In this document: in pieces, positions 4,420 to 62,495 of the stretch
How positions within the stretch are numbered: the first letter of the stretch is position 1
How the letters are laid out: the number at the start of each line of letters is the position of its first letter
Assembly (NCBI GenBank): GCA_964199315.1
Contig: OZ116704.1
Coordinates: forward strand, 26,226,001 to 26,290,000
Direction: 5' to 3'
Source: Orbicella franksi
Lineage: Eukaryota
Length of the DNA: 64,000 bases
Made by a program: the position numbers and the translations under genes
Notes under the pieces: generated by a model
The model's input: only the letters and a program-made list of their open reading frames with translations
What the model was told of the DNA's origin: nothing
Database searches by the model: none

Positions 4420-7400
4420 CTAAGTTTTCTGTTCCTTTGTACTTGCTTCAGTCTCAAAACCTTTTCTACCTCCTAGGTCAGCCTGTTCCCCAGTCTCCTT
4501 CTCAATTTTTCGGAGCCGTTTCATCAACACTCCTTCGAGAGATTTTAAGATTTTTTTCTTCCAAGGAATGTTTTCCATCTCAAATCTCTGCCTAGTCTCG
4601 ATAACTTTTTTGGCAAGCTGCTGAAGCGAAGTGTATTGTTTTTTCGGGGGAAGGGATGTTAGGAAGCTACAGTTTTTATCGTTTGTTCTTTCAGACTTGA
4701 TGGCAGTCGAAGCTTCAGTCTTCTTGCGATTTCCATTCTGGCAAGAAGTATTTTTCTCTACCTTAGGCACTATCTTATTTACCTTTGAAATTTCGGGGTT
4801 CGCGTTCGATTTCTGGCCCGACGGTGAGTTACGCGAAGCTTTGGAGCTACCATTTGATTGTTGGTATTCCTGTGCAGTACCTAGAGGTTTGAAACTTGTA
4901 TTTGAATGGCGTTGGTTTCTCTGTGTATTACGCGAAACGTCTGATTGCTGACTGCTGTTCGAACTAGTATTAGGCTGTTGGGTTGCCTGTGCATTAAGTG
5001 AAACACGGAAGCTTGAATTGGATTGCTGGTTTGTCTGAGCATGTAAGTTTCCATTGAACTGTTCGCTTTCCTTACGTTTTCGTGAAATATGCAGTGAAGC
5101 ATTATATTGTTGCGAGAGCTGTGCCTTCCTTGAAGTATTGTATTGCTGGTTTCCCTTTTCGTTGTGTGAACCATGTAAGCTGGCGTCAGAATGTTGCCTT
5201 ATTTGTGCAGTGGGCGAAACGAGACTGGAGTGTTGGTTTGCCTGTGGATTGGATACGATGGTAACAGTGCTATGAGATTGCTGGTTTGCCTGTGCGTTGC
5301 GTGAAGCGTAGAAAGTTGCGTTCGATTGTTGACTTGTTTGTGCAACAGGTGAAACGCGAAGGCTTGCACATGACGCTTGGTTACCTTGTGCATCAAGGGT
5401 AGCATCAATTTTTTTGCCTCCCTGTGACACATGGACGCTCGAATGATGGTTGGCCTGTGGTGAAACCAGGACGGTTGTATCAGATCGTTGGTACACAGGC
5501 TCATCATGAGTGGAAGAAACACTTCTCTCTGTTTTTATTTTAACGTTTGAAATTTGACTTTGAATTGGTGAGGTGTTTTTCCCTGCTGGAGAATTTCGAG
5601 AAGTTCTGATTATCATGCGCTGCATGCTCTGAATAGGATCACTTGATTTCTGTGTGCTCTGTGGACATCCTTTCTGATCTAAAACGCAGTAGCACCGCTG
5701 GCCGGAAGCTGCGGCACCACATACTTTCTTGTGTTGTTGATCGTCTGCTAAAGAAGACCGCTGAGTTGTTTGAGTATTGCATCTCTGCTCATTTGCCAGA
5801 AGTGATATCGAGGCTGATACTTTGTGATAAGACTGCTGACCAGAAGTATGAACTTCACGTTTTGCCTCCATAGAAACCTCCACTTCAGTATGTTTCTGCT
5901 GACTAGATACTAGATCATCAAGCTCGATTTCAGTCAGACGTTCTCCTCTGTTGATACTTGGCATGTTGTCGCTGATTAACTTTCCCCCTTTGAAACGCCA
6001 GAGATAACTTGCCTTTGTTTCTTGGCCGTGCACGGCGTCTTTTTCCCGCGATTCTGGACGGACGCCGTTTTCCACTGGATGCCGATAACGCTGCCCAGAT
6101 TCATTGTATGATTTGACGGAAATATTGCTGCGTAAAACGTTGTTTGATGGCGACAAGGGTGAATTAACCGAAGGCAAAGACTGATTTTGACTTGGTTTGG
6201 AAATCGTTTGTGGGAAATGCTGAAGAAGGCTTGCGAGTGAAATGTTCGTCGTGGTCGTTTCCTCTTCTTGTTTGAGGACGTTTCTCTGTGGAGTATCTCC
6301 GTAAGTTTCGCATTGATTCCTTGGAACGTTTTCGTGCACATGCTGTGTCAGGAAAATATCATTAGCTTTGACTTGATCATCAGACTTGCGTTTAACATTA
6401 CACATGTCAGAGCTCAAAGCCAGCGCTGCATGACGCTGACTAGTTGACGTCTGTGCGTGGATGTTACCAGGTCTTACGTTGGTGTCGTGTTGATTATGAT
6501 AAACTGCAGATGCAGGGTAGGAGTCGGGGCGATTTGCTCCCCTTCCTGAATTTTGTGAAACAGTATAAATCTTTTCTTGAACATGTATCGGGATATCCTT
6601 GTTTGTTCCGCTTCTAATGGGTCCCTGGACGATACCATTGTGCTGTGAGTTTGGGGTAACTCGAGATGGATTCACAGAGGACCGAGGAATCCCTTGATGT
6701 ATGCTACGAGCACTATGCAAAGGACTGTTTCCTTGAGGACACGAAGCTGGCCTCGATCGCTGAAGATTTGGAGAACTTTGATTGTTCCGATAACAAACCT
6801 CTGGGTTTTGTTGAAAATTTGTTCTAGAATCATAGTCTACGCGATTCGACTTGGAGTTCTGAGCATTTGAAATTGTTTGTACAGTGCTACCTCGAACTGC
6901 GTTCGTTCTTGGGCTTTTTTGCAACTGACACCAAATTTCATAGAGTTTCCGCAGCTCGTAAAAATTCACTCCTTCAAACGTTTGTTGTCTAGGATCCACA
7001 TTTCCTTGAGAGTAGGCCAGCCACTCTTGCATCAGGTTCTGTTTTAAAACACGTTTGACCTGTTCAACGTTTCCTTGGAACTTGGAAAGCAGGTGATAGA
7101 GCACATAACGTTCGAAGGTAACTTCCTCCGAAGAGCTCTTAGTCATATTACCAAAAGCAGATTGGTTGGTTTCCTGATAACGAGGATGACCTTGAGCAAT
7201 AGTTTGCTGATTTTGCGCTCTAACAGATCTTGTTTGCGAATGGCCCTTTCCTCTTTCCTCTACTGATGCACCACTGTAGGAAGGCTTATTCTGATTGGCT
7301 TTAGCTCGAGAAATAAAAGCTTTGTTTTTCGCCCATTCGTCTTCATCCTGTGAGCCTCGTGATACAGAATGCACTGCCACGATTTTCGGCATTGCCATGT

Positions 7401-8201
7401 GGTCAAATGCGTAACCTCCGCATGTCGAATTGTCTGGGCTCTCTATTTGTCTTGGTACAGGCTCTGCAGAAAACAATTTCTGTTTTACAATTGAAGAAGG
7501 CGACACAGGTTTAGCTTTAAGCGACTCTGTTCTCTGAAATTGGTCACCAGGAGTCCTCGCATTTCTCGACACGTTCCCTGGAAAAGTCGCTGCACTATGT
7601 TTACATCCCCCGTTATTCCTTAATGTTCTCCAGTCTATTGCAGGATCGGGAGTGTTGTCTTTTGTATAATGCTTTTGGAGGCTTCCCCAGCGGATTTCCC
7701 GTTCATGCTTGTACACTGCTGGTTGTTTTAACAGGGGTGGGGGAGGTCCTAGTGGCTTCAATGAATTTCCAAGGGTTCGAGTCTTTTCAAACATTTCCTC
7801 CCTAGCACTACTTGTCTCGTTTCTCCTTCGCACGGGATTTTGCTCGGCAAAAGCACAATAGTCCTCTAGTCGGGAGCACTTAGGATCTGCTGACCTAATA
7901 GTCGCGTGACTATGCTCCAAGGATCGCTTAGTGGGGCGATGGAGAAGCGGAGGAGGTTCGTGAGAAGTCACGTGACCTTGGGCTTCCCCACCGTGGTCTC
8001 CGTGTTTTTTCTCTTGCAAACTGTTTTTCTCGAATACTTGCCTGAATGATGATAATGTACCGTTTTCGTTGAGGTATTGCTCCAGCAAGCTGTGTAATGT
8101 TTTTGAACAGGCAATCCATGAGTTGGGTCCATTCCGTTGATTGTCCATGTGATAAGAAGCTTCGTTTGTGCCAGGAGTGGTTGGCGGCAACGCTTTGACA
8201 T
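4420..8201 (-). CDS. Paralog P1: large low-complexity protein of an unrecognised family (single giant coding exon, about 1240-1260 aa)
   Basis: Uninterrupted 3.8-kb ORF. Splice acceptor CCTTTTTTTAG|ATGTC ends at 8202. First in-frame ATG is at 8148 (MDNQRNG). Contains GGYAFDHMAMPKIVAVHSV (7363-7419) and C-terminal LQQLAKKVIETRQRFEMENIPWKKKILKSLEGVLMKRLRKI (4504-4626), both shared with P2 and P4. Confidence 0.88.
4826..5457 (-). repeat. Degenerate coding tandem repeat (about 12-17 aa unit, QxNQQSNxSxxxSxNA) inside P1
   Basis: About 14 units visible in the translation, e.g. QTSQQSNATFYASRNA, QANQQSHSTVTIVSNP, QTNQQSNSSFRVSLNA. Confidence 0.7.
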
Positions 8202-11200
8202 CTAAAAAAAGGAACGTTAGAGATGTTACGTTTCCACGAAGTTGATAGGTAGTTACCACAATAGCTAGTAATACATCTTAGCCTGCAGTTTAGTAGTTTT
8301 GTGTGTAGAAATATGTGCTAACGAGTCACGGTAACACGTGAACACCACATTACCAAATTTACAAAATGCTACTAAACAGTAAGATTATGAGCTTGAGATT
8401 TCTATCGCGTGATATATAGTTGTTGACGAGGGCGCAGCCCGAGTCAGCTATCACACATAGAAATGGATAGCGAATAATCTAATTGTTTTAGTGTAAATCT
8501 ACTAGTCGTTCAAAACTTTATCTACATCCTCTTTACAGACACCTCGAAGACGCAAAGAAGCGGCCGCAAGTTCGTCAACAAGCACACACTGCTAGGCTAC
8601 TTACTATCTACAACAGAACAGAGAGTGAGTAACCTAGCCAATCATCGAATGACATTCGTGATAGAACGCTAGTAGATTTATACTGATATGTGTTATGGCC
8701 CCTAAAAGGCTTGATCCTAAACTTATATTTCTTAGATGGCCGACTAGCCAGGTTACGCATGCAGATTTCAGGTTTTACCCCTCTCTTTCCTTCACAGAGG
8801 CTCCCTAGCGGGGTGAGCGAAGGGCGGAAAAAGGAGAAGGCTGCGCGTGGGGGACCCCAGCCTCCGAAATGTCAAAGTAACACGAAAGAGGCCTCTGAAA
8901 GGGAGAGAGATGTTACCCTCGAGACAGAGATATCTCTGAATCTGACCAGAAACATTCTATATTGATGATGTAGCCTTGCAAAACTCCGTACGTTGTCTCT
9001 AAATGGTTGTCGCTATACTGCAACGTTTTGCGACCAATTTGCCACACACTAAAAGGATGACTGTAGACCATCGTCCTCGCTATAAAATGTCGGACTCGAA
9101 GCTAGACCTCTCTCGAGCGAAGAATGAGTCAAGTTTTTTTCTAATTACTTCAATCCGTTCAGTGTAAACAGTGTAAATAGTGTAAATAGTGTCACAATGA
9201 TGCGGCAGCTTGCTTCCCTACTAAGGCGATTTTGAAATGTCACCAGCATCAACCCACAAGCTTACAGGCTGTTCTCTGTTGTCAAGCACTAGGACTGAAG
9301 AACAGCTTAGTTTACCAATAATGATTGTGCTTTCTTAACACAATACAGTCTTCAAAAACAAGATTATCCACCTCTAGTCCCCTTAAAAGCTATTCAGATA
9401 TTTTCGTTGAACAGAGAACCCTTAATCGTGCATTTCACTGTGATAAGAAATCAACAACAACAAATTAAATAAACAGATGTAGTACTGTTCTTACTTTGCT
9501 TTTTAAACCTCTCCATCGCAAATTGGTCGCTAATATTGTAGTTAACGGAGTTTGAAAATATAAATCTAGCTTTCAGCGCGACAAAATTAAGCAATCATTG
9601 ATGACAAGTAAGATGTGTGTTTCAAAGCCGTCTAAATAGTCAAAACAAAAAAGGGCAGGCACCAAATAGAATCCTTACCCTCGTTTCCATTTCTCATTTT
9701 GTCACCAGGCCCCCTGTAGCCACCATTTGTTTGTAAGCGGTCGATCGTCTGATCTCTCAATAGGGAACTGGTACCCAAAAGATCTGCTGCCTCCCTCGAG
9801 TGGTTAAAAAACTCGGCGAACTCCTTGTAATTCATACTTTTGAATTTTTGAGAGCGACTCGTTGGCACTGCAATAGAAACAAATTCAACATTGAAACAGT
9901 CATTAATTAATGTTGCCCCTAAAAAATACATCTTAACCCCACGGCGATCCAAACAATGATTTTACAAAAATTCATGTATTAGAACGGATCCCGTTCAGCG
10001 CCCCATCCACACACGCCTACCATTCAATCTAATATTTCATGTGATAGTAAAACTACTGATTATGATAAGTATAGCAGTCACCGACCAATGCTGTTAAGAT
10101 CAGTGCGTGACAGTTTTGTCAAAAAAGTTTTATCGTCCCCCATATAAGACTTGCAACCGCTAATTCCAACGTCCAACGTCATTTTCCACTTGTACCAAAT
10201 CGAACAATAGCTCAGTCAAACAATAGCTTCGTTGGGTTAATTGAATTAGAATTATTTGGTACATGTCACCATATGCAAAAAAATCAATGTGTACAAAATG
10301 AAACTACTAATTAAGAGTAAAAAAAAACAATTTTGACATTAGGTACAACATGATTCTTAATCTTCTTTTGATTATTAGAGTTGCCCTGGAGAAATAAAAT
10401 TTTGTTCGCAGGCTGTACGCGTTGTTTCCATGCACTGTTACTCTATTTGTATGACAGGTGTAGCAGGTAACTGGTTTGAATTTAATAAGAAAAGATACGT
10501 TGCGACGTTAACGAACGTATAAAAGGAAATTCATTCGCGACAAAAGTCCCTTCAATGACACAAAACACATACCAAATAGAAACGTCATCAGTGAGAACAG
10601 ATACTTCAATATAGGTCGAAAATCTATCCAGTTAAAGTGTTTGGAGAGGCACAGATCAAATATATAGTTCAAATCGATACTTCTTAGCGCTGTCAATAAT
10701 ATATCACACGTGATTTCAATCAGTTACCGAAATAAGAGCATTTGTTGCAACTTTGTTTGGAAGTATCCTTAAGGAATACCAACTTTAAATGAAACTATCA
10801 ACGAGAGCATTCTCCAGGTTAAGCCAGTTTGTTTAATACATGAAGATATCAAACTAATTAAGCGATTACTATCGCACTGTATCTTGACAAGATGTGTAAA
10901 TAAATTTTACGAAAGCCTATTAATTTGTCAGTGTGTCTCTCCGTTAACATACAATAAAAAAATATAGGTTGATTCAAAATATTGCTATTTCTTTATTTCC
11001 CTTTGTACACAATTTAATAAACGCTTTCGAGTCCCCAAGCTTGTTGTGTAAAATAATGACTGCGCGGCTCACCTCTAAAAGTTGTCAGCGGGAGTTTTGA
11101 TCATCTGAACATTCGAAAGTATACAAATTGTCCACTGATACAGCCAATATTAGTTAAAATGGCATTTCCAGATAATACACACCTGTGGGCGAATCAAAAC

Positions 11201-26214: not shown

Positions 26215-26351
26215 NNNNNNNNNNNNNNNNNNNNNNNNNNNNNNNNNNNNNNNNNNNNNNNNNNNNNNNNNNNNNNNNNNNNNNNNNNNNNNNNNNNNNN
26301 NNNNNNNNNNNNNNNNNNNNNNNNNNNNNNNNNNNNNNNNNNNNNNNNNNN
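26215..26351. other. Assembly gap (137 N)
   Basis: Run of N characters. Confidence 1.
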
Positions 26352-42084: not shown

Positions 42085-42747
42085 TCATAAGATATATCTT
42101 CCAATCAATGGAATGGTAACAACGACCTTTTCTCTTCCATAATTAAATTTAACTTTGTACTGAACTGTCAAACATTGACTGTGAATTCTTTGTGCTAGAA
42201 TGAAAGGCATTTCTGAATGACTTTCAAAATCAGTACACCATACTTCAAGGGGGTCCGGAAACCAGTTCCTTTCAGGATAGCCCTTGAACCAATCAACCTC
42301 AGCGAGCACAAAAGTAAGTTTCTGCCTTTTGCCTTGGCCTTGCTTTACAACCACATCATTGGTAAGGAATCTGCAAACTTTTCCTGGCCTACACTCCCCG
42401 TTAAACCATTTAGCTAAAACACCATAATTCCTTGAACATCTGTATATTGCACCACTGATTTGAACTCTTGAAAAGCGGTCACAGAGTCTTTGAGTAGAAA
42501 CTACCTCACAGTTGGGAAGCAAAGTTTTATACATTTCTGTAAGTTTGGAATGATCATCATCATTTAAAGCAATCCTCTTGACCGGTGGCAAAGGAACAAT
42601 TGTTCCACTCTGTTCTTCATTCAGCATTTCTCCAAGAGTGCCAGTTTGAGTAGCGGTAGCAGAAAGCAAACACTGGAATTGTTTATGTTCATTGGGGAAG
42701 TCCATCATGCGTAACTCAATATCCTGAAGAAATGAGGTGCACCTCAT
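42085..42747 (-). mobile_element. EnSpm/CACTA (CMC)-type transposase C-terminal fragment
   Basis: Open 220-aa frame with CRPGKVCRFL..FVLAEVDWFKGYPERNWFPDPLEVWCTDFE..PFILAQRI..EKVVVTIPL. This resembles the C-terminal region of animal EnSpm transposases. The catalytic N-terminal part is missing. Confidence 0.65.
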
Positions 42748-43516: not shown

Positions 43517-43517
<1 letters not shown>

Positions 43518-44650: not shown

Positions 44651-44665
44651 TTATTATTATTAGTA

Positions 44666-44722: not shown

Positions 44723-44723
<1 letters not shown>

Positions 44724-45130: not shown

Positions 45131-45200
45131 ATGATTATGATTATGATTATGATTATTATTGTTATTATTATTATTATTATCATTATTATTATTATTATTA
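45131..45200. repeat. Imperfect (TTA/TGA)n microsatellite
   Basis: Direct reading. Confidence 0.9.
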
Positions 45201-49284: not shown

Positions 49285-49923
49285 GTGAGTCATTAAGATT
49301 ACAGAAGTATTTTTGTTTGCACTGCTTGTGTTTACAGCCACTGAAAGCGTAAATAAAGCGAACGCGACAATGCCAATTGGTGTTGTAAATGGTAATAGGT
49401 TATCGTTCAGCGCGAGTTGGTTGAGGTTCACAGTGTTTCAGCAAGAAGAAAGGGGAAGAATGAATACACGTGTCGGTGCTGCTTCTGTCTATCACGCTGA
49501 AACACCTTGAGCCTCAATTAAGCAACTGTAAACCACTTTGTTTACCAGCATTCATGTAGGTATTGTGTGGTTTTCCCGGCGCTTTCGATGATGCCATCAG
49601 ATCAGTATGGTAGCAATGTAAGACTGAAAGTAGATCGATCTGATTGACTGAGTCAATTTACCTGATGCCGTAACGAAAGTTTAACTTCTCTTTCGTGAAT
49701 AAAAGTAAATAGTAGGCCTGCATGACTTGAGTTACAATGATAATGTGTAATCTAGCGAAAATCATATGACATGAAAAACAAAAATTGTCCGCCATGCAGA
49801 ATTGATTTACACAATTATACAGTAAAACAATGGCCGTGAAACTTTCCGTGCACTGCTCAGGCAGTCAACGAAAAGCAGGAGCTAAACTGTTCCTTTAATT
49901 TACTTGTTTTCATTTACATGTAG

Positions 49924-51212
49924 TGGTTTTATCGTCAACGGAAGTGACAAACTACAACACTCCTGATGACTTTTTTCTTCGGCCGTTCTTGACCAGAGAA
50001 GAATTTGCATATTGGAACAGCCATTTTTGCCGCGTTCCATCTTCACGTTCATTCTTGCGCGCATTCAACCCACAAGTTACCACAACCATGACTTCCGGTC
50101 ATCATAAGACGTCTTGTGTCACGAATGTCACAGATACACCATGTTGCGATGAAAGACATCAAACTGGTGTGCCAGCGGTCCATGACTTAAGTACAAACTG
50201 CTGGAGCAATACAAGATGTGGCGAAATGCCCTGCTTCCCAGAAAACATCCCATCGTCAAGTGTAGAAAAAGGATTCGCTGGGAATCCTGTCTGCTTGGAA
50301 CATTTAGTTCCATGTACCAGTCACGCCTATCAAAACGGAAACCACCTTGACCTATCTACTAACTGTTGTGAAACAACGGAAAGTTATTTTGTTCAGCAAG
50401 AGGTGGAGCCCACAAAACTGAAGGGAAGGTATTTTGTTTATGGAGATGAAAGCTTTGGCAAAAAGCCTCCTCCTTTCACATCGTCTGGTTATCAGGAGGT
50501 TCACCCCAGGACTGGATCTGCTGTCCTCAGTGATTCAATGAGCGCTTATGGTGTACATTCAGAATTCGGATCAACTAATTCTTTCCCGGCTAAAAGAAAA
50601 TCCATAGGTACATCAAAGTATGAAAAATTTCCCCAAGAAAAGCAAAAGAGACCGTGCGTTAGCGATGAAGTAAATGGAATTCAACAAGATCAGGCACCAA
50701 TCAAAATCGAACACAAAAATGAAACTTGGAATGCTCATCAAAACGAACGCCCGCGAATCAGTGGTTATCGCGGCAAGGAGGCGAGATGCAAGATCAACGA
50801 GTCAAGTAACGTGCGCAAATCACGTGAAATAACAATGCCACCTGTTCAAGATTGCGTGGAGCAAAGCATCGATATTACCATCTCTGGCGATAGCACTTCC
50901 GGATGCAAACCCGGAAGTAAAACCTTTAAAGAAACTCAGCCAACAACGACTGACTTAACTGGGAACAACAGTGACGCTGCGTTCAAGTCACGTGTTCTGC
51001 AAGCTGGTGACCAGATTCCAAATGGTCGGAACAAATCTCCTGAGCGAAAAAACATTGATGAGGTTATCAAGACCACGAAGCCTGTCCAAAGAAAGCTGAT
51101 GACCAATGACAAAACCGGTGGCTGTGCTTTCGATCATGATTCCTTTCCCAAACTTGTCGGTGTGCTTAGTCCCTTCGCCGTAGCTACTGTGATGTCAAGT
51201 TTAGCAAAATAA
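49924..51212 (+). CDS. Paralog P3: short family member (about 490 aa spliced, or 374 aa from ATG 50088), ending just after the conserved motif
   Basis: Open 1.29-kb frame after acceptor TTTCATTTACATGTAG|. Contains GCAFDHDSFPKLVGVLSP (51120-51173), with a stop 13 codons later. Confidence 0.75.
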
Positions 51213-52639: not shown

Positions 52640-55600
52640 CGCTATTTCACTTCAAAACAAAACAGGCTTGTAAATAAGAGGTCAAAGGGTCTCGGTTACT
52701 ATCGAACTGTCGAGAATGATCAATATCTGACACACATAAAACGCTACTCGAAAACTCGGAAGCTCGTTCGAAACTTATTTTTGTTATAAACTATCAAAAA
52801 TGTGATACTTTTTTCAAATTGCTTTCGTGAATGACCTGTTACGAATCTATCAGGGCAGCTGAAGACCATGTAGAGTAGACAATTTCACTTTCTGACAAAC
52901 ACCCAGCATTGATAATTCTCGGGCGGAAAGCTATATCGTGGTTTTAATTTTCACTTGTTTTTTACTTATTTGTTTTTCGGGAGGCCAGCCAACAGAACGT
53001 GGAATGGTTAAGACTTAGGAGCAACGCAAAGGGAAGGGAAAAATTATTGAAGTCAAAACAGAAATGTTCAAGGAACAAAAAAACTGAAAAATCTGGCGAT
53101 TAGAGAGGCAAACTGAAAAAGATCTCTTGTAGCAAATTATGCGGTCAGTTTAGTGTCGTGTTTAGTTATTTCAGTTTCATTCGCTTGATTCACACAAGGT
53201 CGATTTTTTTAAAAAAAGAACAGTGACATAATAGTTTTCGATTTCAGAAATAATATGGGTCAATGATGTCCTCTAATTCAGTTTCGTCAGCAGGTCTACT
53301 TGAACGAGCCTCCACAAGTTACAGCTGACAAGACTTACGACGTGGTAAGTACAGTCAGTGATTGTGCTGGTAAACTAAGATTGGGTGAATAACCAAGCCA
53401 AGTGTAAATAGTCTGTGCATAAAGTTTTAAACAGATTTAAGTGATTCATATAGTCTGCTTTGCGCAAATATATCGCTAGGAAGACTGAATTTGACTTTAA
53501 AACCCGTGCGCGTGCTCAATCAGCATTGCTCCGTCAATGTAACAACTTGAATACTGACCAGCTGGGCTTTTCACTGGGCCATTTTATTACCACTACTTGT
53601 AACTGGTTTATAGCCAGGCAACATGCGCGTTTCATATTCGTATGTTCAGACGTACTCTAGAGTTCACGTTTTACATCGTTTACATCGGAGTTTTGTCACG
53701 TTCTACGATTACACTTTGTTTGCGATAATCAAAATTATCAAGTTCGATCCAAGGAAAATAATAATGGTATTTTCCTGTCAGTTACAAAACTTCAAAAGGT
53801 AGTAATGAACTAATAAGAGGAACAATCGAAATTTGAGATAGAGAGAGAGAACAGACGACGAACCTGAAAACGTTAGGCCAAATTTTTCATTATATCACGT
53901 CTTACGACCTCAAGTCAACCGGAACAACATTTATTCGTTCAACCACTTTGGCGTTTTCGAAACTAGCTCGGTATGTTTCTTCCCTCGCCTTCATGACGTA
54001 GCAAAACAAATGGAAACCGAAATAAAGGTCCGGCCACATTAAACATGCACTTAATTGCATTGCTAAGGGCCGGAGGAAAGTGAAAAGAAGTTTGTTTCAG
54101 TTTTTACTTCTTCACTTCCGTTGTCTCAGTACTGAAGCGTTTAAGACTAACTCTTCTGCTTAGTATATGTGGTTTCTAGATCGTAACGTTGTCAAAAAAC
54201 GCAGCTAAAATATTTTACATCTTGGTTTTGATATTTTTAGCGCACTTTGTTAATGTTACGCTCGATCGACATTCTCAGTGGCGTATCATAAACAACTGAG
54301 AATGAAAAATGAAAAGATCGCGTCCGTGATTTGCATCTTCAAATACCGGTGCATACGGACAAACGACTCGGGCGAAGAACCCAACGATAAAACCTCTGAG
54401 GCAACAATAAGCGAAAGAAACAAAAAGATTCACTGAGAGCCATTTCAAGTATTTGTGTATTTCGTTAGGTATAATATTCTTAAACCTTTCGCCGGAAACA
54501 GCTTTTTGATTTCTTGATTTGTTTCTTTCATTTTATATTCCATCGATGGTTCTTCGAAACGATTTTCAGAGCGTAACGTTTATGTGTCATTCGTCTTATT
54601 TCTCTCGGGTTTTAAATCACGTTTTATAGCCGAAAGCATGTTGGAATGGGCATCCGTTTCCGCTGAAACGCTGAAACTGAAGTAACGGCAATTATAGCTT
54701 TTTATAAACAGTTAATTAAAGGCCGCGTTAATTTCCTTGTACATAGCAAACTGGTCTGCCTTCCGCCAGTACTAGTTGAGATATATATTTATTTGAATTA
54801 TTTACTCTCTTTCAATTTAAGTTGCATTCAGTGATACGTGAACGAATCCATGCATTACAAAGTTACTTGATGAAAAAGAACTGGTTAATCAGCATACAGC
54901 AGTAAAATCAAATCAGTAGGCTACAATATATGAGCATTTGTTATTCTTAATACTATCTGCTTTTTTTTTTTTTTTTTTGTTTTTCAATTTAGTTTGCTCT
55001 GAAGAGCTTTTTCTCCAAGTGTTATTTTATCTCGTTCATTGTTGATGTTTCGGTAGTTCTGATGTTTTTGTTATCAGCCAGTTAATTATATTTTTCAATA
55101 AACAAATTGAATATGTATATCTTTTTGTACCAAACAATTTATCACGTAAACAGCACGTGTTCAGGAAACAAAAGCTACAGAATACAAGGAAGCAGGATTT
55201 CTTAACGTCAATCATCCTTTTCAACCCGCATTTGCGTTGACTGAAAAAGTAAACAATAGTAATTCTATTCATGTAAGCAGTGACTGGTCGTGTTACGATG
55301 ATACTTCACTTTCCATCAAGCAACAAGAATATCATGTCAAGGTTTGAATGGTAAGCCACATAAGCCGGCTATTACGAATTACTCGCGTCGTAGAAAGTTT
55401 CACGCGTCGCGGGAGAAGTTCAGGACTTTGATTAACAGACTTTCTAAGATCAAGAAGTCAATTTTCAATACGCGGACGCTGTCGATCTTGCTTAATACCA
55501 ATTTGCTTTGGATTAAAAGGACGCGGTAACTCTGGAAACAGCAGCCAACCTCGAGCCAACCGGAGAGGACAGTAACGTCAGCAGCCGAGAAGAATTATAC

Positions 55601-58600
55601 CTAGGACTTTTCCGGCTTTGAAATAACATGGTTGAAGTGTTCGTTATAAGCTAGTGCAGAGAGAGGTGCCGACCACGGTGAGTACGTGTTTGGGGTCATT
55701 TTGTTGATTTTAATTATACCACGATCAGTTAATTCTTAACTCCCTCTAGGACAATGTTCTCTAGAGGTTCCTAGTCAGCCGGGGAAAGCTTTTGAATTTT
55801 GCTTCCAGTTTCACGCCACATAAATATACCGTCTGCGTTTTCAGGCGACATGATGAAATACACGGCGAAAATTTCAACGAGCAAGCTGCTGAAGCAGCTA
55901 TTTGGATAATATGATATTAAAACATAGTCATTCAGTCGTGAGACGAGGCCAAAGAGCATAGAAGCTCATAAAAGGAAGTGACTGACGTCGAACAACAAGA
56001 CCTTCTTAAGTTATAACAGCGAACGAGAGAAATACGAAAACGATAGTGAATTCTTTGTTCTTAAAAACATAAAACTCTGCTTGAATTAAGAGTGATCTCT
56101 TCAAAAGTTCCTAGCTTGTTTATATTAAGAAACGATTTAAGGCTTCCTGGAGGAAAAACGGATAAAAAAGAATCAGTCATGGTCAAAAAAGCTTTAAAAA
56201 AAGTTATTGCTTTGTTCTGTGCATTGGCATTTTTGTCAAAAATGTTACAATATGACTGTTTGTTACAGACTGCCGCCAAGTAGAGCAATTTTATTCAGGA
56301 TATCTCCCTGATTATGAGACGAGTCACTTTAGCCTACCCCCCTTGTCTCGCCTTCTTCCCTACTCGGCCACGGCCATGTCGCCCTTTAGCGTTCGCGATG
56401 ATAAAACACTAATCTAAGTGACCCTTAGAGAAAAAAAAGGCTACTTGCAGTCTATATTCCTTAGAATTGCAATTGTTGTTATTTTACGCTACAAAGTTTG
56501 CTTTGGATGATCAACAATCATTAATTCAATATAGAAAAGGCTAATTGCTATTTTCTATGTAAGGAGTCCTCGCGATAACATACTCCAATTATTTCAGCTG
56601 AGATGGATCCTTGCTGCTGCACGAAATCGTCAATTTCAGGAATTTGTTAACTTACAACGTTCTGACTAAGTATGGCGTAGTAGTCATGGACTGGTAACAA
56701 AAATCTAGAAAGTACAATTTGAATTACGTTAATTAATTCGATCTCGATTATTTCGGATTTCCAGTTATTTCGTTATCAAATCTTCTTCCCTTGTTCACTC
56801 TCTTGTTTCAGTTCAGTCATTTACCATAGCCGTTTATTTCGAATCAATCGGTGGGTCGAAGTTAGGCTTTGCCATTTCGAACTTTTTTTGTTCCTCTTGG
56901 CTAAAAATCAGTTTATTTCGATCTCCAAAGGTTGGGTCGAAAAAAATATATCACAAAACTAAAACACTAAAATTTGACCTTTTCAATACACTTTCATCTT
57001 ATACTGTAATTAGGATGTCCTCGGGGTTTTCCCTTCCAGTTTTTTGGTCCTAAAAATATTCCATTCCATCATGATCTAGTTTTACCACAAACTGAAATGG
57101 GATAGATGTCACTCCAGCTAGCGAGACAAAATCTACCTAAAGATACTTAGCAGTGAGTCACGATTTTGACAATTATGGTCTGTCGAGATCACACTTCAGC
57201 AGAATCCAAGACGAGAATTTTTGGGTTCGAGCATTTGTCATAAAAACTTTTTGTCTGAGGTTTGAAGCGACCTAATGAAACGACAGGTGACAATTTTAAA
57301 AGCTAATAATATAAGTGAGATCACAAGGAAGTCATTCAGTCCTAAGACGGGGGCAAAGAGCATTGAGGAACTGAGAGATTGATGACGAACGGCGAGACTC
57401 TTTCGAAGTGATAACGGCCAAGGACAAAACACGAAAAAAACGTTTTGTTGTTAAGGATATGAATCGCCCTTAAGTAAATAGCGAGCCATTAATAAAGATT
57501 GCTGCTTCTTTTTTTTAGACCCGCAGATTCAACAGGCGAAAGGCTTTCACGTTGAAAATAAGAGAAAATAATTCTAGTAGATACAAACATTCGTTGCTTT
57601 GTCCTTCTTCCTAGTATTTCGTTTAAGTGTCAGTTGCAAAATTACTATTCGTTATAATTTCGGAAGCTGATATTTTCCTTTGATTGGGTAGGAAGTAATT
57701 ACTTTCAGTATCTTAAAATTACCACTTTATTCGCCAGTATGCAAAGAAATCTCGTGTTTGTCAGATACCTCAACTATCAAAGACCGACAAAGAAGGTTGA
57801 ACGGGAGACCCGTGCACTAAACTGATAATTAACATAAGAATATTTACGGAGAGTCATACTAAAGGGTAATGACAAATAGAAGAATGGATACTTTGCAACG
57901 AGCCACCGTTTGGAAAATTATGGTCTGTCGAGATCACACTTTTACAAGCAGATTTCCCATCAGGAAATATTTTTTTACCGTTTGAGAATTTTTCATCAGT
58001 GGCAAAACTCTTTGTTAAAGGAAAGTTTTTCATCGGTCAGGAATTGACACTAAGTAAAAAGCCTCAGGAGAAACTCCTGCCTTGTGTACTTGGTTTAATA
58101 GCTTAATCATATCGCTTTTGATGGGTCGGGAAATTTTTGAAATGCCTGAGAAACTCCTGCTCTGTGTATTTAACTTAACTTTGCGGAGTAAACAAACATG
58201 ATTTGAATGCCTTGTCTGATGATGTCTTGTAATTACATTGGGCGCTAAAAATAAATCATTGTTACACCAAGTCAGTCTGAATGGTGCAAAATTTCATTTT
58301 CGTGATCAGTAAAGGGCAAACAGAACAACAAGGAACACATGACAATTTCGCTCACAAACAACACAACAGAGAACACGGAATCAGAATAGAAAATATTGAG
58401 GATATTTATTTTGTAGAATGACCGTATTGTCACGGAATATGAAACACGTCTAACTGGGTGCGTTGAGATCCATTCAATATGCGAATTTTTCTTACGTTTT
58501 CAACTTCACACCTTCATATAAAGGTAGGGATATCGGTATATGTGAAATTCGTTTCTAATCAGTCGGTGCATTTTCTTCTTTCTTTTAACAGGGAAAAGGC

Positions 58601-58727
58601 CTGACTGCCATCTTAGTGACTGTACAGTACTTTGGTTCATGCTCAGTTACCTTCGCCTCCAATTCGAAGAGAAGAACATGCAATCTCTTATGGAATAGAT
58701 ATCCATCTTCTTCAGTACTCCATCAAC

Positions 58728-61700
58728 ATGCAAACACAACAGAATAAAGAGAACCCTTTGTTTCTCAGCAGCGCGGTTAAAAATGAAGGAATCCCTTCTA
58801 TTTGCGCAGTGAAACATGAAAACTTATTGATTGATGACACCTGTCAACTTACATCACCCACGTCCGATTCTTCTGTCAAACGTCCCTTGATTGACAGCCA
58901 ACATGACATGACCACGTCAAGTTCAAAACGCATCAAACAAGAATGGGACGATCCATCATTCTGGGCAAATAAGGAGAGACGTTTACTCTCAAGCAAGACG
59001 AGCTTGCAGAATATCGTCAGTGAAGTGGCTGATTCGTTTGAAAGCAACAATTGCGTGAGAAATGCATCGTTTCAGGGCTTTGAGAGCTCCAACAGGAATC
59101 TGTCTGGTGAAGATGACGCAATAGCTTTGAAACGAAAGAGAAGACAATTTGAAAGTTCGACCCAAATTGTTGCGAGTGCGAACGAAGTTACAACTGGGGA
59201 TGAAAATGTAGAAGTAGTAGCGCCTTCCATTGATTGCCACAAAGAGGAACGTTCGGTGCCCTCAATTGCTGATCACGTTCAGCCTGAAACAGCGAAGCCA
59301 ATTCTAAGACCTCTGAAGAGTCTTGATTCCGGACTAAGCGAGGGTTATGCATTTGATCATAACTTCTTTCCCAAACTAGTCGGAGTTCACTCAGCTTTAT
59401 TACCAACGTCAAGCTCGCCAGAACTAGAGTCGAATCATCAATCCCAACAAACAACGTATGTACCACTGCTCAAGAAACTTGCACCAAATCAAGAAACAAG
59501 GGATAGAAATTCTTCCCCTCCGCAAAACGCCGAGAATACTTTAACAGCGGTTTCAAATCGAAACTTTCTTGGCCATTGTAAAGATGACAACGGTCACGCA
59601 ATTCCCAAGAATACTGGCCAGGTCAGGTCACTTGAAACGCCCTTGATGTCACGGACTCAAAATGCATTGACTTGCGACACCAATTTATGCAAACGTGACT
59701 TGCTCGAAGATTCAAGGGTTCATGCGCAGAATGCATCAAGGACATTACCCATCACTCCCCGTGTTCCTTCCACGGACAATCGTCCAGTTCCATGGATAAA
59801 CGCCAGCTTGTTTAGTCAAAAGAAACACGGAACAAAATCACCGGAAACCGCAGCTAACATTTGTACATCGACTGATGCAACAGTTGCTGAGCATGCGCAG
59901 GGTAAAGACAGTGCAAGACATGACGCGGTGGATAGTGCGTCACAACTATCCCCACTCCTCTCTCCGGTTAGCCCAAGAACTCACAGTCTGGTTTATTCAA
60001 GTAAGCAAACTTCCAAGAAGTCTTCCAAAAAGCTCAAATCAGTCAACATGCAGGAAATGGTCAACATTTATAGAATGGCTACCAGTGCCTCGTCACGCAA
60101 GAATCAAACTAAGGGCGCCACTCTTCATTCTCCTCCAGATTCCACGTCACAAAAGCCATGTGACCTCTTGTTTTCCTTTACGACAGCAGACGGCAAAAAC
60201 GACTTATTTCTTGTCGTAGACGACGAAGTGTTTGCAGTGAAACGGTTCGACTACAAAGGCGTGTCGTATTTGATTCACACCGATAAAAAGGGAAAGGCTT
60301 CGATTTTAGCCAAACTTCCAGAGGAGGAAAAGTTGAAGTTGCAACACAGCGACACAAGCTCAAGCAGTCGTCAGCAGTTTCCGTCTAACAGAGCAAGTAC
60401 CTGTAATGTCACGTCCAGCAGTTCAAAGCAATCAAGGCGCACATCTCGCCCCAGGCTTACTCCACAGTGCCCTTCTGGGACATCTCTTAGTGTCACAGCA
60501 CTGCAGACGTTTTGTGAAGAGACCTATGGTGACAAAGCTCAGGCAACGTCAGGTCAGCAACCGGTTCTAGATGAAATTTCCAGAAGAACGGGCGGTCAAG
60601 GCAGGCAGAAACAAGCAACATCACTGGATGTGGATGAAGTTTTATCTAAACGTCAAGCCGTGTATGGTATGCGGACACAAAGCGATAATGATAGACCTAT
60701 ATCTTTTTCAAGAAGTGGCAATTTAAATCCAGACAGAAGGCAGCTGCTCAAACAATTACTGAATGGTATAAGAGCAAGCACAGCCCGTCGGAAAGGGCTG
60801 CCTCTGGACACAAATTGGCCACAAAGTGTACCTGTTAGTCAGCAGCACTCGTCTTCTCAAGCATGCGCTGACAGACAAGGCAGGCATCAAGGAAGTGCTG
60901 TTCCCATCAAGGCAAGCTCCAATCCCAGACCTACGCATGCGGCGCGGAACCGTTGCGGCAATCAACAGGGCAACGTGAATCCAAATCCAGTGGACAGAAA
61001 TCAACAGATTGATGAAGTGAATGCGCACAGTCATGAACAGTTCACATACACCTCATCGCAGAGTCCTTGCAACGGAAACCAAGCCGTCGGAACTCGGCAT
61101 CAACCTTACGACAATGAAGAAATTGTTGATGAAGACAGTTATGGGAACTTTGCCAACAGTAACAAATCGATGATGAGCGGGAACAGAAATCCAGAGAGAG
61201 TGAAGTTAATGAGTTACATTGCTCGTCGTTTGGCTTCAAAAGCAGAACGTGCCTCGTCAACGGCTAACGCCTCATATTATAATCAGCCACCAAGCAGGCG
61301 ATCTGAAGTCGAAAGACAGATATTTAATAGGACTATGGCAAATCCGTTGAGCACTAGAGCAACAAACGCATCGACCAGAAGACACGAAGAGTTACCGCCA
61401 CTTCAGCAATGTCAACGACTTATGGACCTATTGGTAGGGACGTATAATGTTAAATCTGATGATAATCGCGAAAACGGTGGACTAAAATCCTCATCAAGAA
61501 AAAGACCGGCCGAAGGCACTCGAGTTGCCAATAGTCCAACACCACCCAGGGCTCAGGGCATGATGGACCGCTGGATACATTTTGAAAATGAACTGTGGAA
61601 AAAGAGGGTAGCTTCACTCCAAGCTGAGCAGCGACATTCTTTGTATGTCGATACGACGTCTGATTCACTCACTGACGACAAATGCAGATCAGGAAATCCT

Positions 61701-62495
61701 GATCGCCAGGTTCTGAATGATAGAAGGGTGACTTCACGTCTGCATTCAAATCAGTCAAACACGGTTTTGTCTCCAGTGTCTTCAGACGGTGACGAAATCC
61801 CAGGTCTCATTCAGGAACCTCGGCGTCCTAGTAACGACACAGTTACACAAGATGATCAGCATTTTACCAACAGTGTGCCACAAAACACATCAGCGGTTTC
61901 GAGTAATTTAAATTACCATAATTGTATGAGTCATACATCTCTCTACGGCAGATCCTATTTAGTCTGTTGTGAACAGCAGTTTAGCACCGCAAAGAGGCCT
62001 CCAGGACATGAAACAAACGTAAATGAGTGTCTTACCAACATTTCATTTAATCAAGCTGTTGAAAAAAGTGGTTCAGCAGTCCAAAGAGAGTCCGTGTCCG
62101 CGCTCATCAGTGGTCAGCTAAGATCCACTAAAGATGCACCAGTACGAGGCATTGCAGACGTTGCTGAGTCATTGGATGATGAAGAAACGGACACAGATGA
62201 CGGCGATGTCGAAATAATTAGCCCACCTCCCAAAAGATATTCTACGCCTAACACGTTGCTTGATGTTGATGACAAGAGAAATGACAAGAGTCCAGTAGAA
62301 CAAGATACCCGCAAGATTTCCCACGGCGCACTGCGCGCCGAACTAGTGACAAAAATTCGAGCCACCCGAGAGAGAATAGCACAAGAGAATGTCGAGTGGA
62401 AGAGGAAATATCTCTACAGGATACAAACAGAGCTAGAGAATAAACTGGCCAAGGTTTGTGGTACAGCTCACGTTATTGTCATTGATGACGAATGA
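58728..62495 (+). CDS. Paralog P4: 1255-aa low-complexity protein, closest to P2
   Basis: ATG 58728 (MQTQQNKE) aligns with the P2 start. Acceptor TTTTCTTCTTTCTTTTAACAG| at 58591, followed by an in-frame stop at 58602. Motifs: GYAFDHNFFPKLVGVHSA (59343-59396), beta module (60162-60314), C-terminal module plus VIVIDDE (62331-62495). Confidence 0.92.
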   Translation: MQTQQNKENPLFLSSAVKNEGIPSICAVKHENLLIDDTCQLTSPTSDSSVKRPLIDSQHDMTTSSSKRIKQEWDDPSFWANKERRLLSSKTSLQNIVSEVADSFESNNCVRNASFQGFESSNRNLSGEDDAIALKRKRRQFESSTQIVASANEVTTGDENVEVVAPSIDCHKEERSVPSIADHVQPETAKPILRPLKSLDSGLSEGYAFDHNFFPKLVGVHSALLPTSSSPELESNHQSQQTTYVPLLKKLAPNQETRDRNSSPPQNAENTLTAVSNRNFLGHCKDDNGHAIPKNTGQVRSLETPLMSRTQNALTCDTNLCKRDLLEDSRVHAQNASRTLPITPRVPSTDNRPVPWINASLFSQKKHGTKSPETAANICTSTDATVAEHAQGKDSARHDAVDSASQLSPLLSPVSPRTHSLVYSSKQTSKKSSKKLKSVNMQEMVNIYRMATSASSRKNQTKGATLHSPPDSTSQKPCDLLFSFTTADGKNDLFLVVDDEVFAVKRFDYKGVSYLIHTDKKGKASILAKLPEEEKLKLQHSDTSSSSRQQFPSNRASTCNVTSSSSKQSRRTSRPRLTPQCPSGTSLSVTALQTFCEETYGDKAQATSGQQPVLDEISRRTGGQGRQKQATSLDVDEVLSKRQAVYGMRTQSDNDRPISFSRSGNLNPDRRQLLKQLLNGIRASTARRKGLPLDTNWPQSVPVSQQHSSSQACADRQGRHQGSAVPIKASSNPRPTHAARNRCGNQQGNVNPNPVDRNQQIDEVNAHSHEQFTYTSSQSPCNGNQAVGTRHQPYDNEEIVDEDSYGNFANSNKSMMSGNRNPERVKLMSYIARRLASKAERASSTANASYYNQPPSRRSEVERQIFNRTMANPLSTRATNASTRRHEELPPLQQCQRLMDLLVGTYNVKSDDNRENGGLKSSSRKRPAEGTRVANSPTPPRAQGMMDRWIHFENELWKKRVASLQAEQRHSLYVDTTSDSLTDDKCRSGNPDRQVLNDRRVTSRLHSNQSNTVLSPVSSDGDEIPGLIQEPRRPSNDTVTQDDQHFTNSVPQNTSAVSSNLNYHNCMSHTSLYGRSYLVCCEQQFSTAKRPPGHETNVNECLTNISFNQAVEKSGSAVQRESVSALISGQLRSTKDAPVRGIADVAESLDDEETDTDDGDVEIISPPPKRYSTPNTLLDVDDKRNDKSPVEQDTRKISHGALRAELVTKIRATRERIAQENVEWKRKYLYRIQTELENKLAKVCGTAHVIVIDDE

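What the first reader, a model, noticed from the sequence alone, without database searches (positions are those of the whole stretch)
4420..62495. Cluster of four paralogs of an unrecognised giant-exon, disordered protein family
Four long ORFs (P1 minus, P2 minus, P3 plus, P4 plus) look like unrelated low-complexity sequence. They nevertheless share short, strongly conserved islands and the same gene architecture: a splice acceptor directly before one huge coding exon. P2 and P4 are colinear, sharing MQT..NKE, KRPLIDS.H.MTT...KR.KQE, LLSSKTSLQ.IVSEVA.SFE, SIAD.VQ.ET.KPILR, LM.YI...LAS and QRHS.YVD.T.DS. P1 and P3 keep only a subset. Islands conserved amid highly diverged linkers imply selection on linear motifs and mini-domains. 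I cannot assign any known family, so this is the best candidate for an undescribed system in the window.
Basis: partly seen in the sequence, partly recalled or inferred. Interest (0 to 1): 0.88.

Follow-up and report, generated by a model that had tools for sequence, protein, structure and literature searches.

The report
Undescribed coral disordered-protein gene cluster
Four neighbouring coral genes encode mostly unstructured, probably nuclear proteins from a family nobody has described; it occurs in stony corals and sea anemones and is recognisable only by two short, strictly conserved signatures.

Summary
P1 (4420-8259, -), P2 (30131-33757, -), P3 (49923-51212, +) and P4 (58728-62495, +) are real paralogs. 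P2 and P4 are colinear (BLASTP 5e-54). P1 shares three islands with them. P3 is only 429 aa and shares one island.

The assembly gap (26215-26351) lies between P1 and P2, outside every ORF. A related coral assembly has the same gene order and orientation.

P4 is a spliced polyA mRNA: 5' exon ending 55677, GT-AG intron, then the giant exon from 58592. dN/dS is about 0.2 in the islands and 0.5-0.6 in the linkers.

An exhaustive profile search found 78 relatives. Every named one is an 'uncharacterized' protein of stony corals or sea anemones. There is no Pfam, PDB or fold match.

The family signature is a motif (G-G-Y-A-x-D-H-x2-h-P-K-I/L-V-x-V-H-S) followed 150-1000 residues later by a helix of about 45 residues (..TRERI..E.I.WKKK.L..).

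AlphaFold models 87% of P2 at low confidence, with one orphan five-strand mini-domain and a 54-residue helix. P2 and P4 also keep SUMO-site-like and SUMO-binding-like motifs.

My best reading is nuclear disordered scaffolds that work through short motifs. That function is inferred, not shown. It is a genuinely undescribed family of a familiar kind.

The parts
9679..9835 (-). P1 first coding exon: ATG plus 52 codons plus the first base of a split codon
   Evidence: tblastn with the N-terminus of the Oculina RefSeq model P0047 gives 79% identity and E 1e-22. A gtaagg donor follows directly.
4420..8203 (-). P1 giant coding exon (about 1260 codons plus the stop). The acceptor tttttttag ends at 8204.
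   Evidence: ORF. Acceptor sequence. The frame across the junction matches the Oculina model. Orthologs occur across stony corals.
7864..7929 (-). P1 basic, bipartite-NLS-like island (KR ... K..R.E)
   Evidence: These columns are conserved in both subfamilies. HMM hit E 1e-13.
7366..7461 (-). P1 AFDH island (P.R...S..GGYAFDHmaMPKIVAVHS)
   Evidence: E 7e-23.
4498..4632 (-). P1 C-terminal helix island (L..K.I.TR.R...E.IPWKKKIL...)
   Evidence: E 1e-24.
26215..26351 (.). Assembly gap, intergenic between P1 and P2; not part of any gene of the family
   Evidence: Synteny in a related coral is shown.
30131..33757 (-). P2 complete CDS in one exon (1208 aa, ATG to stop). A likely 5'UTR acceptor (tttaaacag) lies near 33893.
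   Evidence: A 99% identical protein, P0022, is in public data.
33554..33619 (-). P2 basic NLS-like island (KRPLIDS...KRTKQE)
33086..33181 (-). P2 AFDH island
   Evidence: E 1.4e-22. AlphaFold models it as a low-confidence beta hairpin.
32717..32875 (-). P2 five-strand beta mini-domain (DLLFTF...SILA..P)
   Evidence: AlphaFold pLDDT is 74-93 in the full-length model. Folded alone, mean pLDDT is 79 with 39 residues at 90 or more. No fold match was found.
30176..30337 (-). P2 C-terminal 54-residue helix
   Evidence: AlphaFold helix at model residues 1131-1184, pLDDT about 89. HMM E 6e-26.
30134..30154 (-). P2 extreme C-terminal SIM-like motif (VTVIDDD-COOH)
   Evidence: Conserved in about 25 of 32 P2/P4-type proteins.
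49923..51212 (+). P3: a 429-aa ORF, a truncated family member that stops 13 codons after the AFDH motif. The acceptor-like catgtag sits directly at the ORF start, and the upstream exons are unresolved.
   Evidence: An ortholog with 446 aa, 73% identity and the same stop position exists in a related coral. PolyA RNA runs hold about 0.9 of its sampled words.
51081..51170 (+). P3 AFDH island (KPVQRK...GGCAFDHDSFPKLVGVLS)
   Evidence: (E 2.5e-09, independent of HMM training).
55323..55677 (+). P4 non-coding 5' exon. The 3' end is exact; the 5' end is a guess from the contig overhang of at least 355 nt.
   Evidence: The loose upstream letters of the RNA contigs map uniquely to 55649-55676. A GTGAGT donor follows.
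55678..58591 (+). P4 intron (GT...AG, 2.9 kb)
   Evidence: Depth is 0 at 57600-58399 in three polyA runs, against 56-188 in the exon. Contigs break exactly at 58591. Sequence.
58728..62495 (+). P4 complete CDS (1255 aa) inside the giant exon that starts at 58592
58878..58943 (+). P4 basic NLS-like island
   Evidence: E 1.8e-17.
59298..59393 (+). P4 AFDH island
   Evidence: E 3e-21.
60162..60320 (+). P4 beta mini-domain
62328..62462 (+). P4 C-terminal helix island
   Evidence: E 1.9e-26.
62472..62492 (+). P4 extreme C-terminal SIM-like motif (VIVIDDE-COOH)

Best explanation
Shown:
- The window holds a conserved cluster of four expressed paralogs of a protein family that has no name, no Pfam model and no solved relative.
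- Every member that carries a species name comes from stony corals or sea anemones (Hexacorallia).
- Each gene puts nearly all of its coding sequence in one very large exon behind a small 5' exon.
- AlphaFold gives most of each protein low confidence.
- The family is defined by an AFDH motif (G-G-[YF]-A-x-D-H-x2-h-P-[KR]-[IL]-[IV]-[AG]-V-H-S). A long amphipathic helix always follows it, 150 to 1000 residues later: EL..KI..TRERI..E.I.WKKK.L..LE.VL.KKLRK.E.ETGEK. In most subfamilies an acidic I/V-rich tail follows the helix.
- P1, P2 and P4 have the full signature plus a basic, bipartite-NLS-like island.
- P2 and P4 arose by a later duplication. They add a small five-strand beta domain, three N-terminal psi-K-x-E sites, and two or three [VI][VI]x[VI]+acidic motifs. 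One of these motifs sits at the very C-terminus.
- P3 is a conserved truncated copy that ends right after the AFDH motif.

Inferred:
- These are nuclear scaffold or adaptor proteins that work through short linear motifs.
- The basic island imports them into the nucleus.
- The helix pairs with itself or with a partner.
- The AFDH motif docks as an added beta strand onto a conserved partner.
- In P2 and P4 the psi-K-x-E sites and SIM-like motifs tie the proteins to SUMO-dependent assemblies.
- P3 lacks the helix and could compete for the AFDH partner.
For: - Paralogy.
- Spliced polyA mRNA for P4. The P3 region is held in the same polyA libraries, whose P4 intron has zero depth.
- Purifying selection focused on the islands: one search gives omega 0.21-0.24 in islands against 0.50-0.60 in linkers.
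- Orthologs of P1, P2 and P4 lie on single contigs in at least four other coral assemblies. Order and strands are identical in one that I checked.
- Family range and signature.
- Disorder and structured islands: one search gives 1044 of 1198 residues at pLDDT under 50, a mini-domain at pLDDT 74-93 and a helix at about 89. One search covers the mini-domain alone. Composition is 73-74% polar or disorder-promoting residues.
- Conservation of the psi-K-x-E and SIM-like motifs across P2/P4-type orthologs.
- The protein language model places the proteins nearest to vertebrate nuclear giant-exon disordered proteins (NEXMIF, PPP1R26, BRCA1 exon 11, RESF1, LRIF1, AF4). Scores are low (0.78 or less), so this is a lead only.
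- Reading these motifs as SUMO sites, SIMs and an NLS rests on established consensus patterns that I recalled from my own knowledge.
Against: - There is no experimental or homology-based link to any function.
- The NLS-like island has a 14-16 residue spacer, longer than the textbook 10-12.
- P1 lacks convincing SIM-like motifs, so the SUMO link cannot hold for the whole family.
- The AFDH motif matches no linear-motif class that I could recall, and AlphaFold gives it low confidence (pLDDT about 50).
- The language-model neighbours are below the level at which chance hits are common.
- P3's dN/dS of 0.70 is close to relaxed evolution.
Confidence: 0.5

Rival explanations
1. The family is real, but it works outside the SUMO and chromatin sphere. 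It could be a cytoplasmic, centrosomal or cytoskeletal adaptor in which the helix is a coiled-coil tether and the AFDH motif binds some other machine. On this reading the psi-K-x-E and I/V-acidic motifs are incidental or serve another reader.
For: The function is unassigned. The helix matches only generic coiled coils from many cell compartments. P1 and many subfamilies lack the P2/P4-type SIM-like motifs. Other subfamilies carry different motifs such as PPPY and a C-terminal C-[ED]-R-N-I-W.
Against: A basic KR...K..K.E island is conserved in P1, P2 and P4. The acidic I/V tail after the helix recurs across distant subfamilies, for example ..GEKADIVIDEE. The psi-K-x-E triplet is conserved amid diverged sequence.
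Confidence: 0.25
2. These are very diverged members of an already named metazoan family of giant-exon nuclear disordered proteins (for example LRIF1, RESF1, NEXMIF or AF4-like), and sequence methods cannot see the link.
For: Language-model feature neighbours include exactly these families. Such proteins evolve fast outside short motifs.
Against: Neighbour scores are 0.59-0.72, where shuffled proteins score as well. No Pfam hit, even at E up to 10, recurs across 35 members. I could not run a direct profile-profile test against those families.
Confidence: 0.12
3. P3 specifically is a decaying remnant of a P2/P4-like gene rather than a working short paralog.
For: dN/dS is 0.70. Only one island is retained and its His is replaced (..VGVLS). 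No P3-like ORF lies within 10 kb upstream of the P4 ortholog in a more distant coral.
Against: The ORF is intact, with the same stop position, in a species at dS about 0.16-0.24. It is 85-87% identical at the DNA level against about 76% for the long intergenic block between P3 and P4. PolyA RNA libraries that show no intron or DNA signal at P4 hold it. An acceptor-like site is conserved at its start.
Confidence: 0.35
4. The long ORFs are not host genes. They are transposon-derived or chance ORFs in low-complexity DNA.
For: Composition is low-complexity and no domain is known. A repeat-like ORF lies between P2 and P3 (43637-44545).
Against: Orthologs are syntenic at single positions in several genomes. 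P4 is a spliced polyA mRNA. Omega is below 1. There are no tandem repeats and no transposon domains.
Confidence: 0.02

Closest known systems
SUMO-linked disordered nuclear scaffolds with terminal SIMs (for example DAXX with its extreme C-terminal SIM, or RNF4-type clustered SIMs); recalled from my own knowledge
   Same: P2 and P4 have clustered [VI][VI]x[VI] cores with acidic flanks, one at the very C-terminus. They also have psi-K-x-E sites and are mostly disordered.
   Different: There is no sequence or domain homology: no DAXX helical bundle and no RING domain. SUMO binding is untested. P1 and P3 lack the motifs.
Vertebrate giant-exon nuclear disordered proteins: NEXMIF (PF15735), PPP1R26 (PF15740), RESF1 (PF15395), LRIF1 (PF15741), AF4/FMR2 (PF05110)
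   Same: One huge coding exon, length around 1200 aa, S/Q/N/T-rich disorder with a few conserved islands. They are the nearest language-model neighbours.
   Different: There is no HMM match, and neighbour scores are in the chance range. I saw the AFDH motif and the WKKK helix only in the hexacorallian family.
Uncharacterized hexacorallian proteins: Nematostella vectensis LOC5506439 (A7SMN0), Actinia tenebrosa LOC116303112, Stylophora pistillata LOC111330583, Oculina patagonica LOC144663918 and LOC144661998
   Same: They are true homologs with the same AFDH motif and helix in the same order.
   Different: None has a described function. The sea-anemone members are shorter (442-1298 aa) and lack the P2/P4 mini-domain.

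Membership tests
AFDH-WKKK family (defined here) | AFDH motif: G-x-A-x-D-H-x2-h-P-[KR]-[IL]-[IV]-x-V-(H)-S | tested here: met
   All four window ORFs match (E 7e-23, 1.4e-22, 3e-21 and 2.5e-09). In P3 the penultimate His is replaced by Leu.
AFDH-WKKK family (defined here) | Helix T-R-x-R ... E-x-I-x-W-K-K-K-x-L, lying C-terminal of the AFDH motif | tested here: met
   P1, P2 and P4 match at E 1e-24 or better. The order is conserved in every full-length relative. P3 does not have it, and no such exon lies downstream of it in the window.
LRIF1 / RESF1 / NEXMIF / PPP1R26 / AF4 (Pfam PF15741, PF15395, PF15735, PF15740, PF05110) | Match to the family's Pfam model | tested here: not met
   hmmscan at E up to 1 on the window proteins and at E up to 10 on 35 family members lists none of these families.
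SUMO-interacting-motif proteins (functional class) | Hydrophobic core [VI]x[VI][VI] or [VI][VI]x[VIL] next to an acidic or Ser stretch, conserved among orthologs | tested here: met
   P2 has VVEI(I/T) twice plus VTVIDDD-COOH. P4 has DVEIIS plus VIVIDDE-COOH. These are conserved in most of 32 orthologs. P1 and P3 do not have them.
SUMO-interacting-motif proteins (functional class) | Physical binding to SUMO | not testable with these tools
   This needs a pull-down or NMR with peptides.
SUMO substrates | psi-K-x-E consensus sites | tested here: met
   VKNE, VK(Q/R/H)E and (I/T)KQE lie in the first 70 residues of P2 and P4 and are conserved in most orthologs. Modification itself cannot be tested here.
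Classical bipartite NLS | KR, a 10-12 residue spacer, then a basic cluster | tested here: inconclusive
   K51, R52, K67 and K70 of P4 are invariant and shared with P1. The spacer is 14-16 residues, and import is untested.
Coiled-coil dimerisation helix | Long helix with a 3-4 spaced hydrophobic pattern | tested here: inconclusive
   AlphaFold gives a 54-residue helix at pLDDT about 89. It matches only generic coiled coils at Z 5.6-5.9. The heptad pattern was read by eye, and P1-type members have a Pro before the Trp.
Transposon or retroelement ORF | Reverse transcriptase, integrase or transposase domain; multicopy dispersed insertion | tested here: not met
   No such Pfam domain was found. Orthologs are syntenic at single positions.

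The most novel reading that the evidence does not exclude
The AFDH motif and the WKKK helix are the two handles of an anthozoan-specific nuclear assembly system. A multi-paralog set of disordered scaffolds (at least six subfamilies in corals) all dock onto the same conserved partner through the AFDH strand and oligomerise through the helix. Subfamily-specific motifs (SUMO sites and SIMs in P2 and P4, PPPY and C-terminal RNIW in others) route them to different pathways. Truncated copies such as P3 act as natural competitors.
Probability: 0.25. Interest if true: 0.6.

Novelty: new variant of a known kind. Interest (0 to 1): 0.42.

Why it matters
Corals and sea anemones carry many lineage-restricted genes with no assigned role. 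Here is one that is old: it is shared by stony corals and sea anemones. It has expanded into many paralogs, is syntenic, is expressed and is under selection, yet it is invisible to every domain database.

The family now has a precise two-part signature, gene models and a tractable homolog in the laboratory anemone Nematostella (LOC5506439). That makes it directly testable.

If the SUMO-scaffold reading holds, it would point to a cnidarian-specific layer of nuclear organisation. If it does not, the AFDH motif is still a strictly conserved short motif in search of its reader. The finding matters mainly to cnidarian genomics and to people who study disordered proteins.

Tried and rejected
- Pfam scans found nothing on the window proteins, on distant relatives, on 35 members one by one, or on eight other window ORFs.
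- PDB profile searches with the P2/P4 alignment and the pan-family helix alignment found nothing at E up to 1.
- A fold search with the full 1198-residue model returned only generic coiled coils for the helix. I then folded the mini-domain alone.
- The mini-domain model has no fold match. PDB Foldseek best E is 0.23 with TM 0.4 or less. VIA wide best Z is 3.5. AFDB clusters returned only a family member. The ESM Atlas returned only weak bacterial beta-sheet matches.
- The third word-index homolog search, run with the pan-family alignment, returned only three proteins of the first row's own subfamily. The word selection evidently missed the helix.
- The Logan contigs for P1 and P4 (L001, L002) are colinear with the genome, introns included, so they say nothing about splicing.
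- Literature searches by locus and accession names, and by topic, found no description of the family.
- Earlier notes of this scan returned nothing for this place or topic.
- TRF found no tandem repeats in P1, although its Q/N/S-rich region looks repetitive.
- From memory, I compared the AFDH motif with these motif classes and rejected each because conserved positions do not fit: HP1 PxVxL, calcineurin PxIxIT, PP1 RVxF, B56 LxxIxE, HCF-1 [DE]HxY, WDR5 WBM and cohesin YxF.
I used orthologs instead.


Full report
**1. What is in the window**

The window has 35-46% G+C and holds four long ORFs.

| Gene | Coordinates | Strand | ORF length |
|---|---|---|---|
| P1 | 4420-8259 | - | 1279 codons |
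| P2 | 30131-33757 | - | 1208 aa, ATG to stop |
| P3 | 49923-51212 | + | 429 aa |
| P4 | 58632-62495 | + | 1255 aa from the ATG at 58728 |

I take 58728 as P4's start because the first residues after it (MQTQQNKE) align with P2's start (MQTHRNKE).

I tested the assembly gap first (26215-26351). It lies in the interval between P1 and P2, 3.8 kb beyond P2's stop codon. No ORF of the finding touches it, so there is no frame or continuity issue. Only the P1-P2 linkage depends on the scaffold.

**2. The observation**

BLASTP of P2 against P4 gives four colinear segments (E 5e-54, 5e-42, 4e-17, 2e-11). P1 against P4 gives two short islands (4e-07 and 5e-05). P3 against P4 gives one (3e-06).

I aligned 65 family members and compared column conservation in the P1-type and P2/P4-type groups. 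Three islands are shared by both groups:
- a basic KR...K..K.E island;
- the motif P.R...S..G.A.DH..hPK[IL]V[AG]VHS;
- a C-terminal helix, L..K[VI]..T..R...E...WKKK.L......L.K.L.K.

HMMs of these islands, run on the six-frame translation of the whole window, hit only the four ORFs. P3 was not used to train the HMMs. It is hit by the AFDH island alone (E 2.5e-09; next best in the window 0.18).

- P3 is short and keeps only one island.
- P4's start is at 58728.

**3. Gene structure and expression**

Twenty public RNA or probable-RNA libraries hold two thirds or more of P4's sampled words. I laid contigs of three polyA libraries and one metatranscriptome on 57000-62999.
- In the three polyA libraries, depth is 0 over 57600-58399 and 56-188 from 58600 on.
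- Contigs in all three polyA libraries break exactly at 58591. They continue with letters that map uniquely to 55649-55676.
- At that upstream site the genome reads ...CCACG|GTGAGT, and at the downstream site ...ttttaacag|G.

P4 is therefore a spliced polyA mRNA: a non-coding 5' exon ending at 55677, a 2.9-kb GT-AG intron, and a giant exon from 58592 that carries the whole CDS.

P2 has the same layout in sequence, with ttttaaacag 136 nt before its ATG. I had no read evidence for it.

P1 has an extra coding exon at 9679-9835. It encodes 52 residues that are 79% identical to the N-terminus of the Oculina RefSeq model (E 1e-22). A gtaagg donor follows it, and it joins in frame to the acceptor tttttttag at 8204. 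This gives a protein of about 1312 aa.

P3's ORF starts directly at catgtag|, and this is conserved in a related species. Its upstream exons are unknown.

The same polyA libraries hold about 0.9 of the sampled words of the P3 ORF. Their zero depth in the P4 intron argues against DNA carry-over.

**4. Conservation, synteny and selection**

P4 and P1 each have full-length relatives down to about 30-40% identity. The few that carry names are 'uncharacterized' or 'hypothetical' proteins of Oculina, Desmophyllum, Stylophora and Montipora. None has a Pfam domain of note.

Orthologs of P1, P2 and P4 sit on the same contig in at least four other assemblies. I judged this from the contig lengths listed.

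In one related coral I read the coordinates:

| Gene | Position in related coral | Strand |
|---|---|---|
| P4 | 450211-454005 | - |
| P3 | 462635-463975 | - |
| P2 | 481016-484663 | + |
| P1 | 519244-523008 | + |

This is the window's order and relative orientation. Spacings compare as follows:

| Interval | Related coral | Window |
|---|---|---|
| P2-P3 | 17.0 kb | 16.2 kb |
| P3-P4 | 8.6 kb | 7.4 kb |
| P1-P2 | 34.6 kb | 21.9 kb |

The order across the gap is therefore corroborated. The interval that contains the gap is shorter in the window.

The P3 ortholog there has 446 aa, is 73% identical, and stops at the same place. A more distant coral has no P3-like ORF within 10 kb upstream of its P4 ortholog.

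Nei-Gojobori dN/dS values:

| Comparison | Overall | Islands | Linkers |
|---|---|---|---|
| P4 vs closer ortholog | 0.41 | 0.21 | 0.50 |
| P4 vs more distant ortholog | 0.48 | 0.24 | 0.60 |
| P3 vs its ortholog | 0.70 | - | - |

A maximum-likelihood tree makes the P2-type and P4-type proteins sister clades (SH-aLRT 100). A further group of eight proteins lies outside them (midpoint root only).

**5. How far the family reaches**

I built a profile of 35 trimmed P1-, P2- and P4-type proteins (A2). HMMER scored it against 1.84 billion representative proteins and gave 78 hits at E 0.001 or better.

The distant hits match through the helix, and most also carry the AFDH motif. The AFDH motif always lies N-terminal of the helix, with 150 to 1000 residues between them.

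Named members add three sea anemones:
- Nematostella vectensis LOC5506439 (A7SMN0);
- Actinia tenebrosa LOC116303112;
- an Actinostola protein.

No hit that carries a name lies outside Hexacorallia. Most hits are unnamed metagenome or assembly proteins that I could not place.

Corals hold several more subfamilies:
- a compact type with the AFDH motif about 150 residues before the helix;
- a type with GGPPPYLP and a C-terminal C-[ED]-R-N-I-W..L...G.F;
- a type without the AFDH motif.

The pan-family helix consensus is EL..KI..TRERI..E.I.WKKK.L.RLE.VL.KKLRK.E.ETGEKA.I (A4).

**6. Structure**

AlphaFold2 on P2 residues 11-1208 with 32 homologs gives mean pLDDT 37.7, and 1044 of 1198 residues are below 50. 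Two parts are confident:
- a five-strand beta unit (model residues 283-340, pLDDT 74-93);
- a single 54-residue C-terminal helix (model residues 1131-1184, pLDDT about 89).

The AFDH island is drawn as a beta hairpin at pLDDT about 50.

Folded alone, the mini-domain has mean pLDDT 79 with 39 residues at 90 or above. It has no convincing fold relative:
- Foldseek against PDB: best E 0.23;
- VIA-align wide: best Z 3.5;
- AFDB clusters: only a 62%-identical family member;
- ESM Atlas: weak bacterial sheets.

The helix matches generic coiled coils only. Profile searches of PDB sequences find nothing.

**7. Motifs and mechanism (inference)**

Composition is 73-74% polar or disorder-promoting residues.

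In P2/P4-type proteins, three psi-K-x-E sites in the first 70 residues (VKNE, VKQE, IKQE) are conserved across most of 32 orthologs. So are [VI][VI]E[VI][VI] motifs after acidic runs, and a V-x-V-I-D-D-[DE] motif at the extreme C-terminus.

By the established consensus patterns, which I recalled from my own knowledge, these read as SUMO acceptor sites and SUMO-interacting motifs. An acidic I/V tail after the helix (for example ..GEKADIVIDEE) recurs in distant subfamilies, so this element may be ancestral. P1 has lost it.

The basic island resembles a bipartite NLS with a long spacer.

I therefore read the proteins as nuclear, motif-driven scaffolds:
- the basic island for import;
- the helix for pairing;
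- the AFDH strand for a conserved but unknown partner;
- SUMO sites and SIMs in P2 and P4 for SUMO-dependent assemblies.

P3 keeps only the AFDH handle. It could be a competitor or a decaying copy.

None of this is shown experimentally. The AFDH motif fits none of the motif classes I could recall.

**8. Comparison with what is known**

No family membership can be claimed. The Pfam models of the language-model neighbours (NEXMIF, PPP1R26, RESF1, LRIF1, AF4) do not match. The neighbour scores (0.78 or less) are in the range that shuffled proteins reach. The resemblance is one of kind: giant-exon, disordered, probably nuclear. It is not evidence of descent.

No paper in the library mentions the named loci.

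**9. Verdict**

This is an undescribed, hexacorallian-wide, multi-paralog family of disordered proteins with conserved linear motifs, one orphan mini-domain and giant-exon genes. The cluster is conserved and at least two of the four genes are transcribed.

It is a new family of a familiar kind rather than a new kind of system. Its function is unknown beyond motif-level inference. Interest is moderate.

Noticed in passing
window 9679-9835 (-): This is an upstream coding exon of P1: 52 aa plus a split codon. It has its own acceptor (tctattgcag) about 30 nt before the ATG, so there is at least one further 5' exon.
   Followed up: partly
window 60680-60712 (+): One metatranscriptome contig (run X7) lacks these 33 nt, an in-frame 11-codon deletion in a P4 linker. 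The ends are AA..AG, so it looks like an allele or species indel rather than splicing.
   Followed up: no
window 43637-44545 (-) and 42085-42747 (-): A 302-aa and a 220-aa ORF lie between P2 and P3. The first has a YIGETG-type motif that reminded me of GIY-YIG retroelement endonucleases, but Pfam finds nothing, so this stays unverified.
   Followed up: partly
window about 33868-33888 (-): A short upstream ORF (ATG CTT AGA CGA TTT TTC TGA) sits in the presumed 5' leader of P2, just after the putative acceptor.
   Followed up: no
P1 residues about 930-1130 (window about 4870-5470, -): This is a Q/N/S-rich stretch with loosely repeated ..AQ.NQQSN.S.. units. TRF finds no DNA tandem repeat, so the repetition is degenerate or compositional.
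   Followed up: partly
P0102, P0113, P0115, P0118, P0124, P0094, P0110 (relatives, not in the window): Another coral subfamily carries GGPPPYLP (a PPxY-like motif) and ends with C-[ED]-R-N-I-W-x-x-L-x-x-x-G-x-F. A third subfamily (P0093, P0095, P0098) ends with ..AKKISSWGGAIKPQP.. These extra conserved motifs are unexplained.
   Followed up: no
P1-type and compact-type relatives; P1 around window 7930-7960 and 7720-7750 (-): A PPPP-L-[LV]-K/H motif (PPPLLHRP, PPPPLLKQP) recurs in P1-type and several distant subfamilies but not in P2 or P4. It may be a further docking motif.
   Followed up: no
window interval 8260-30130 compared with the related coral: The P1-P2 spacing is 21.9 kb here and 34.6 kb in the related assembly. 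The assembly gap sits in this interval, so its true length may be underestimated, or the difference may be due to insertions.
   Followed up: no
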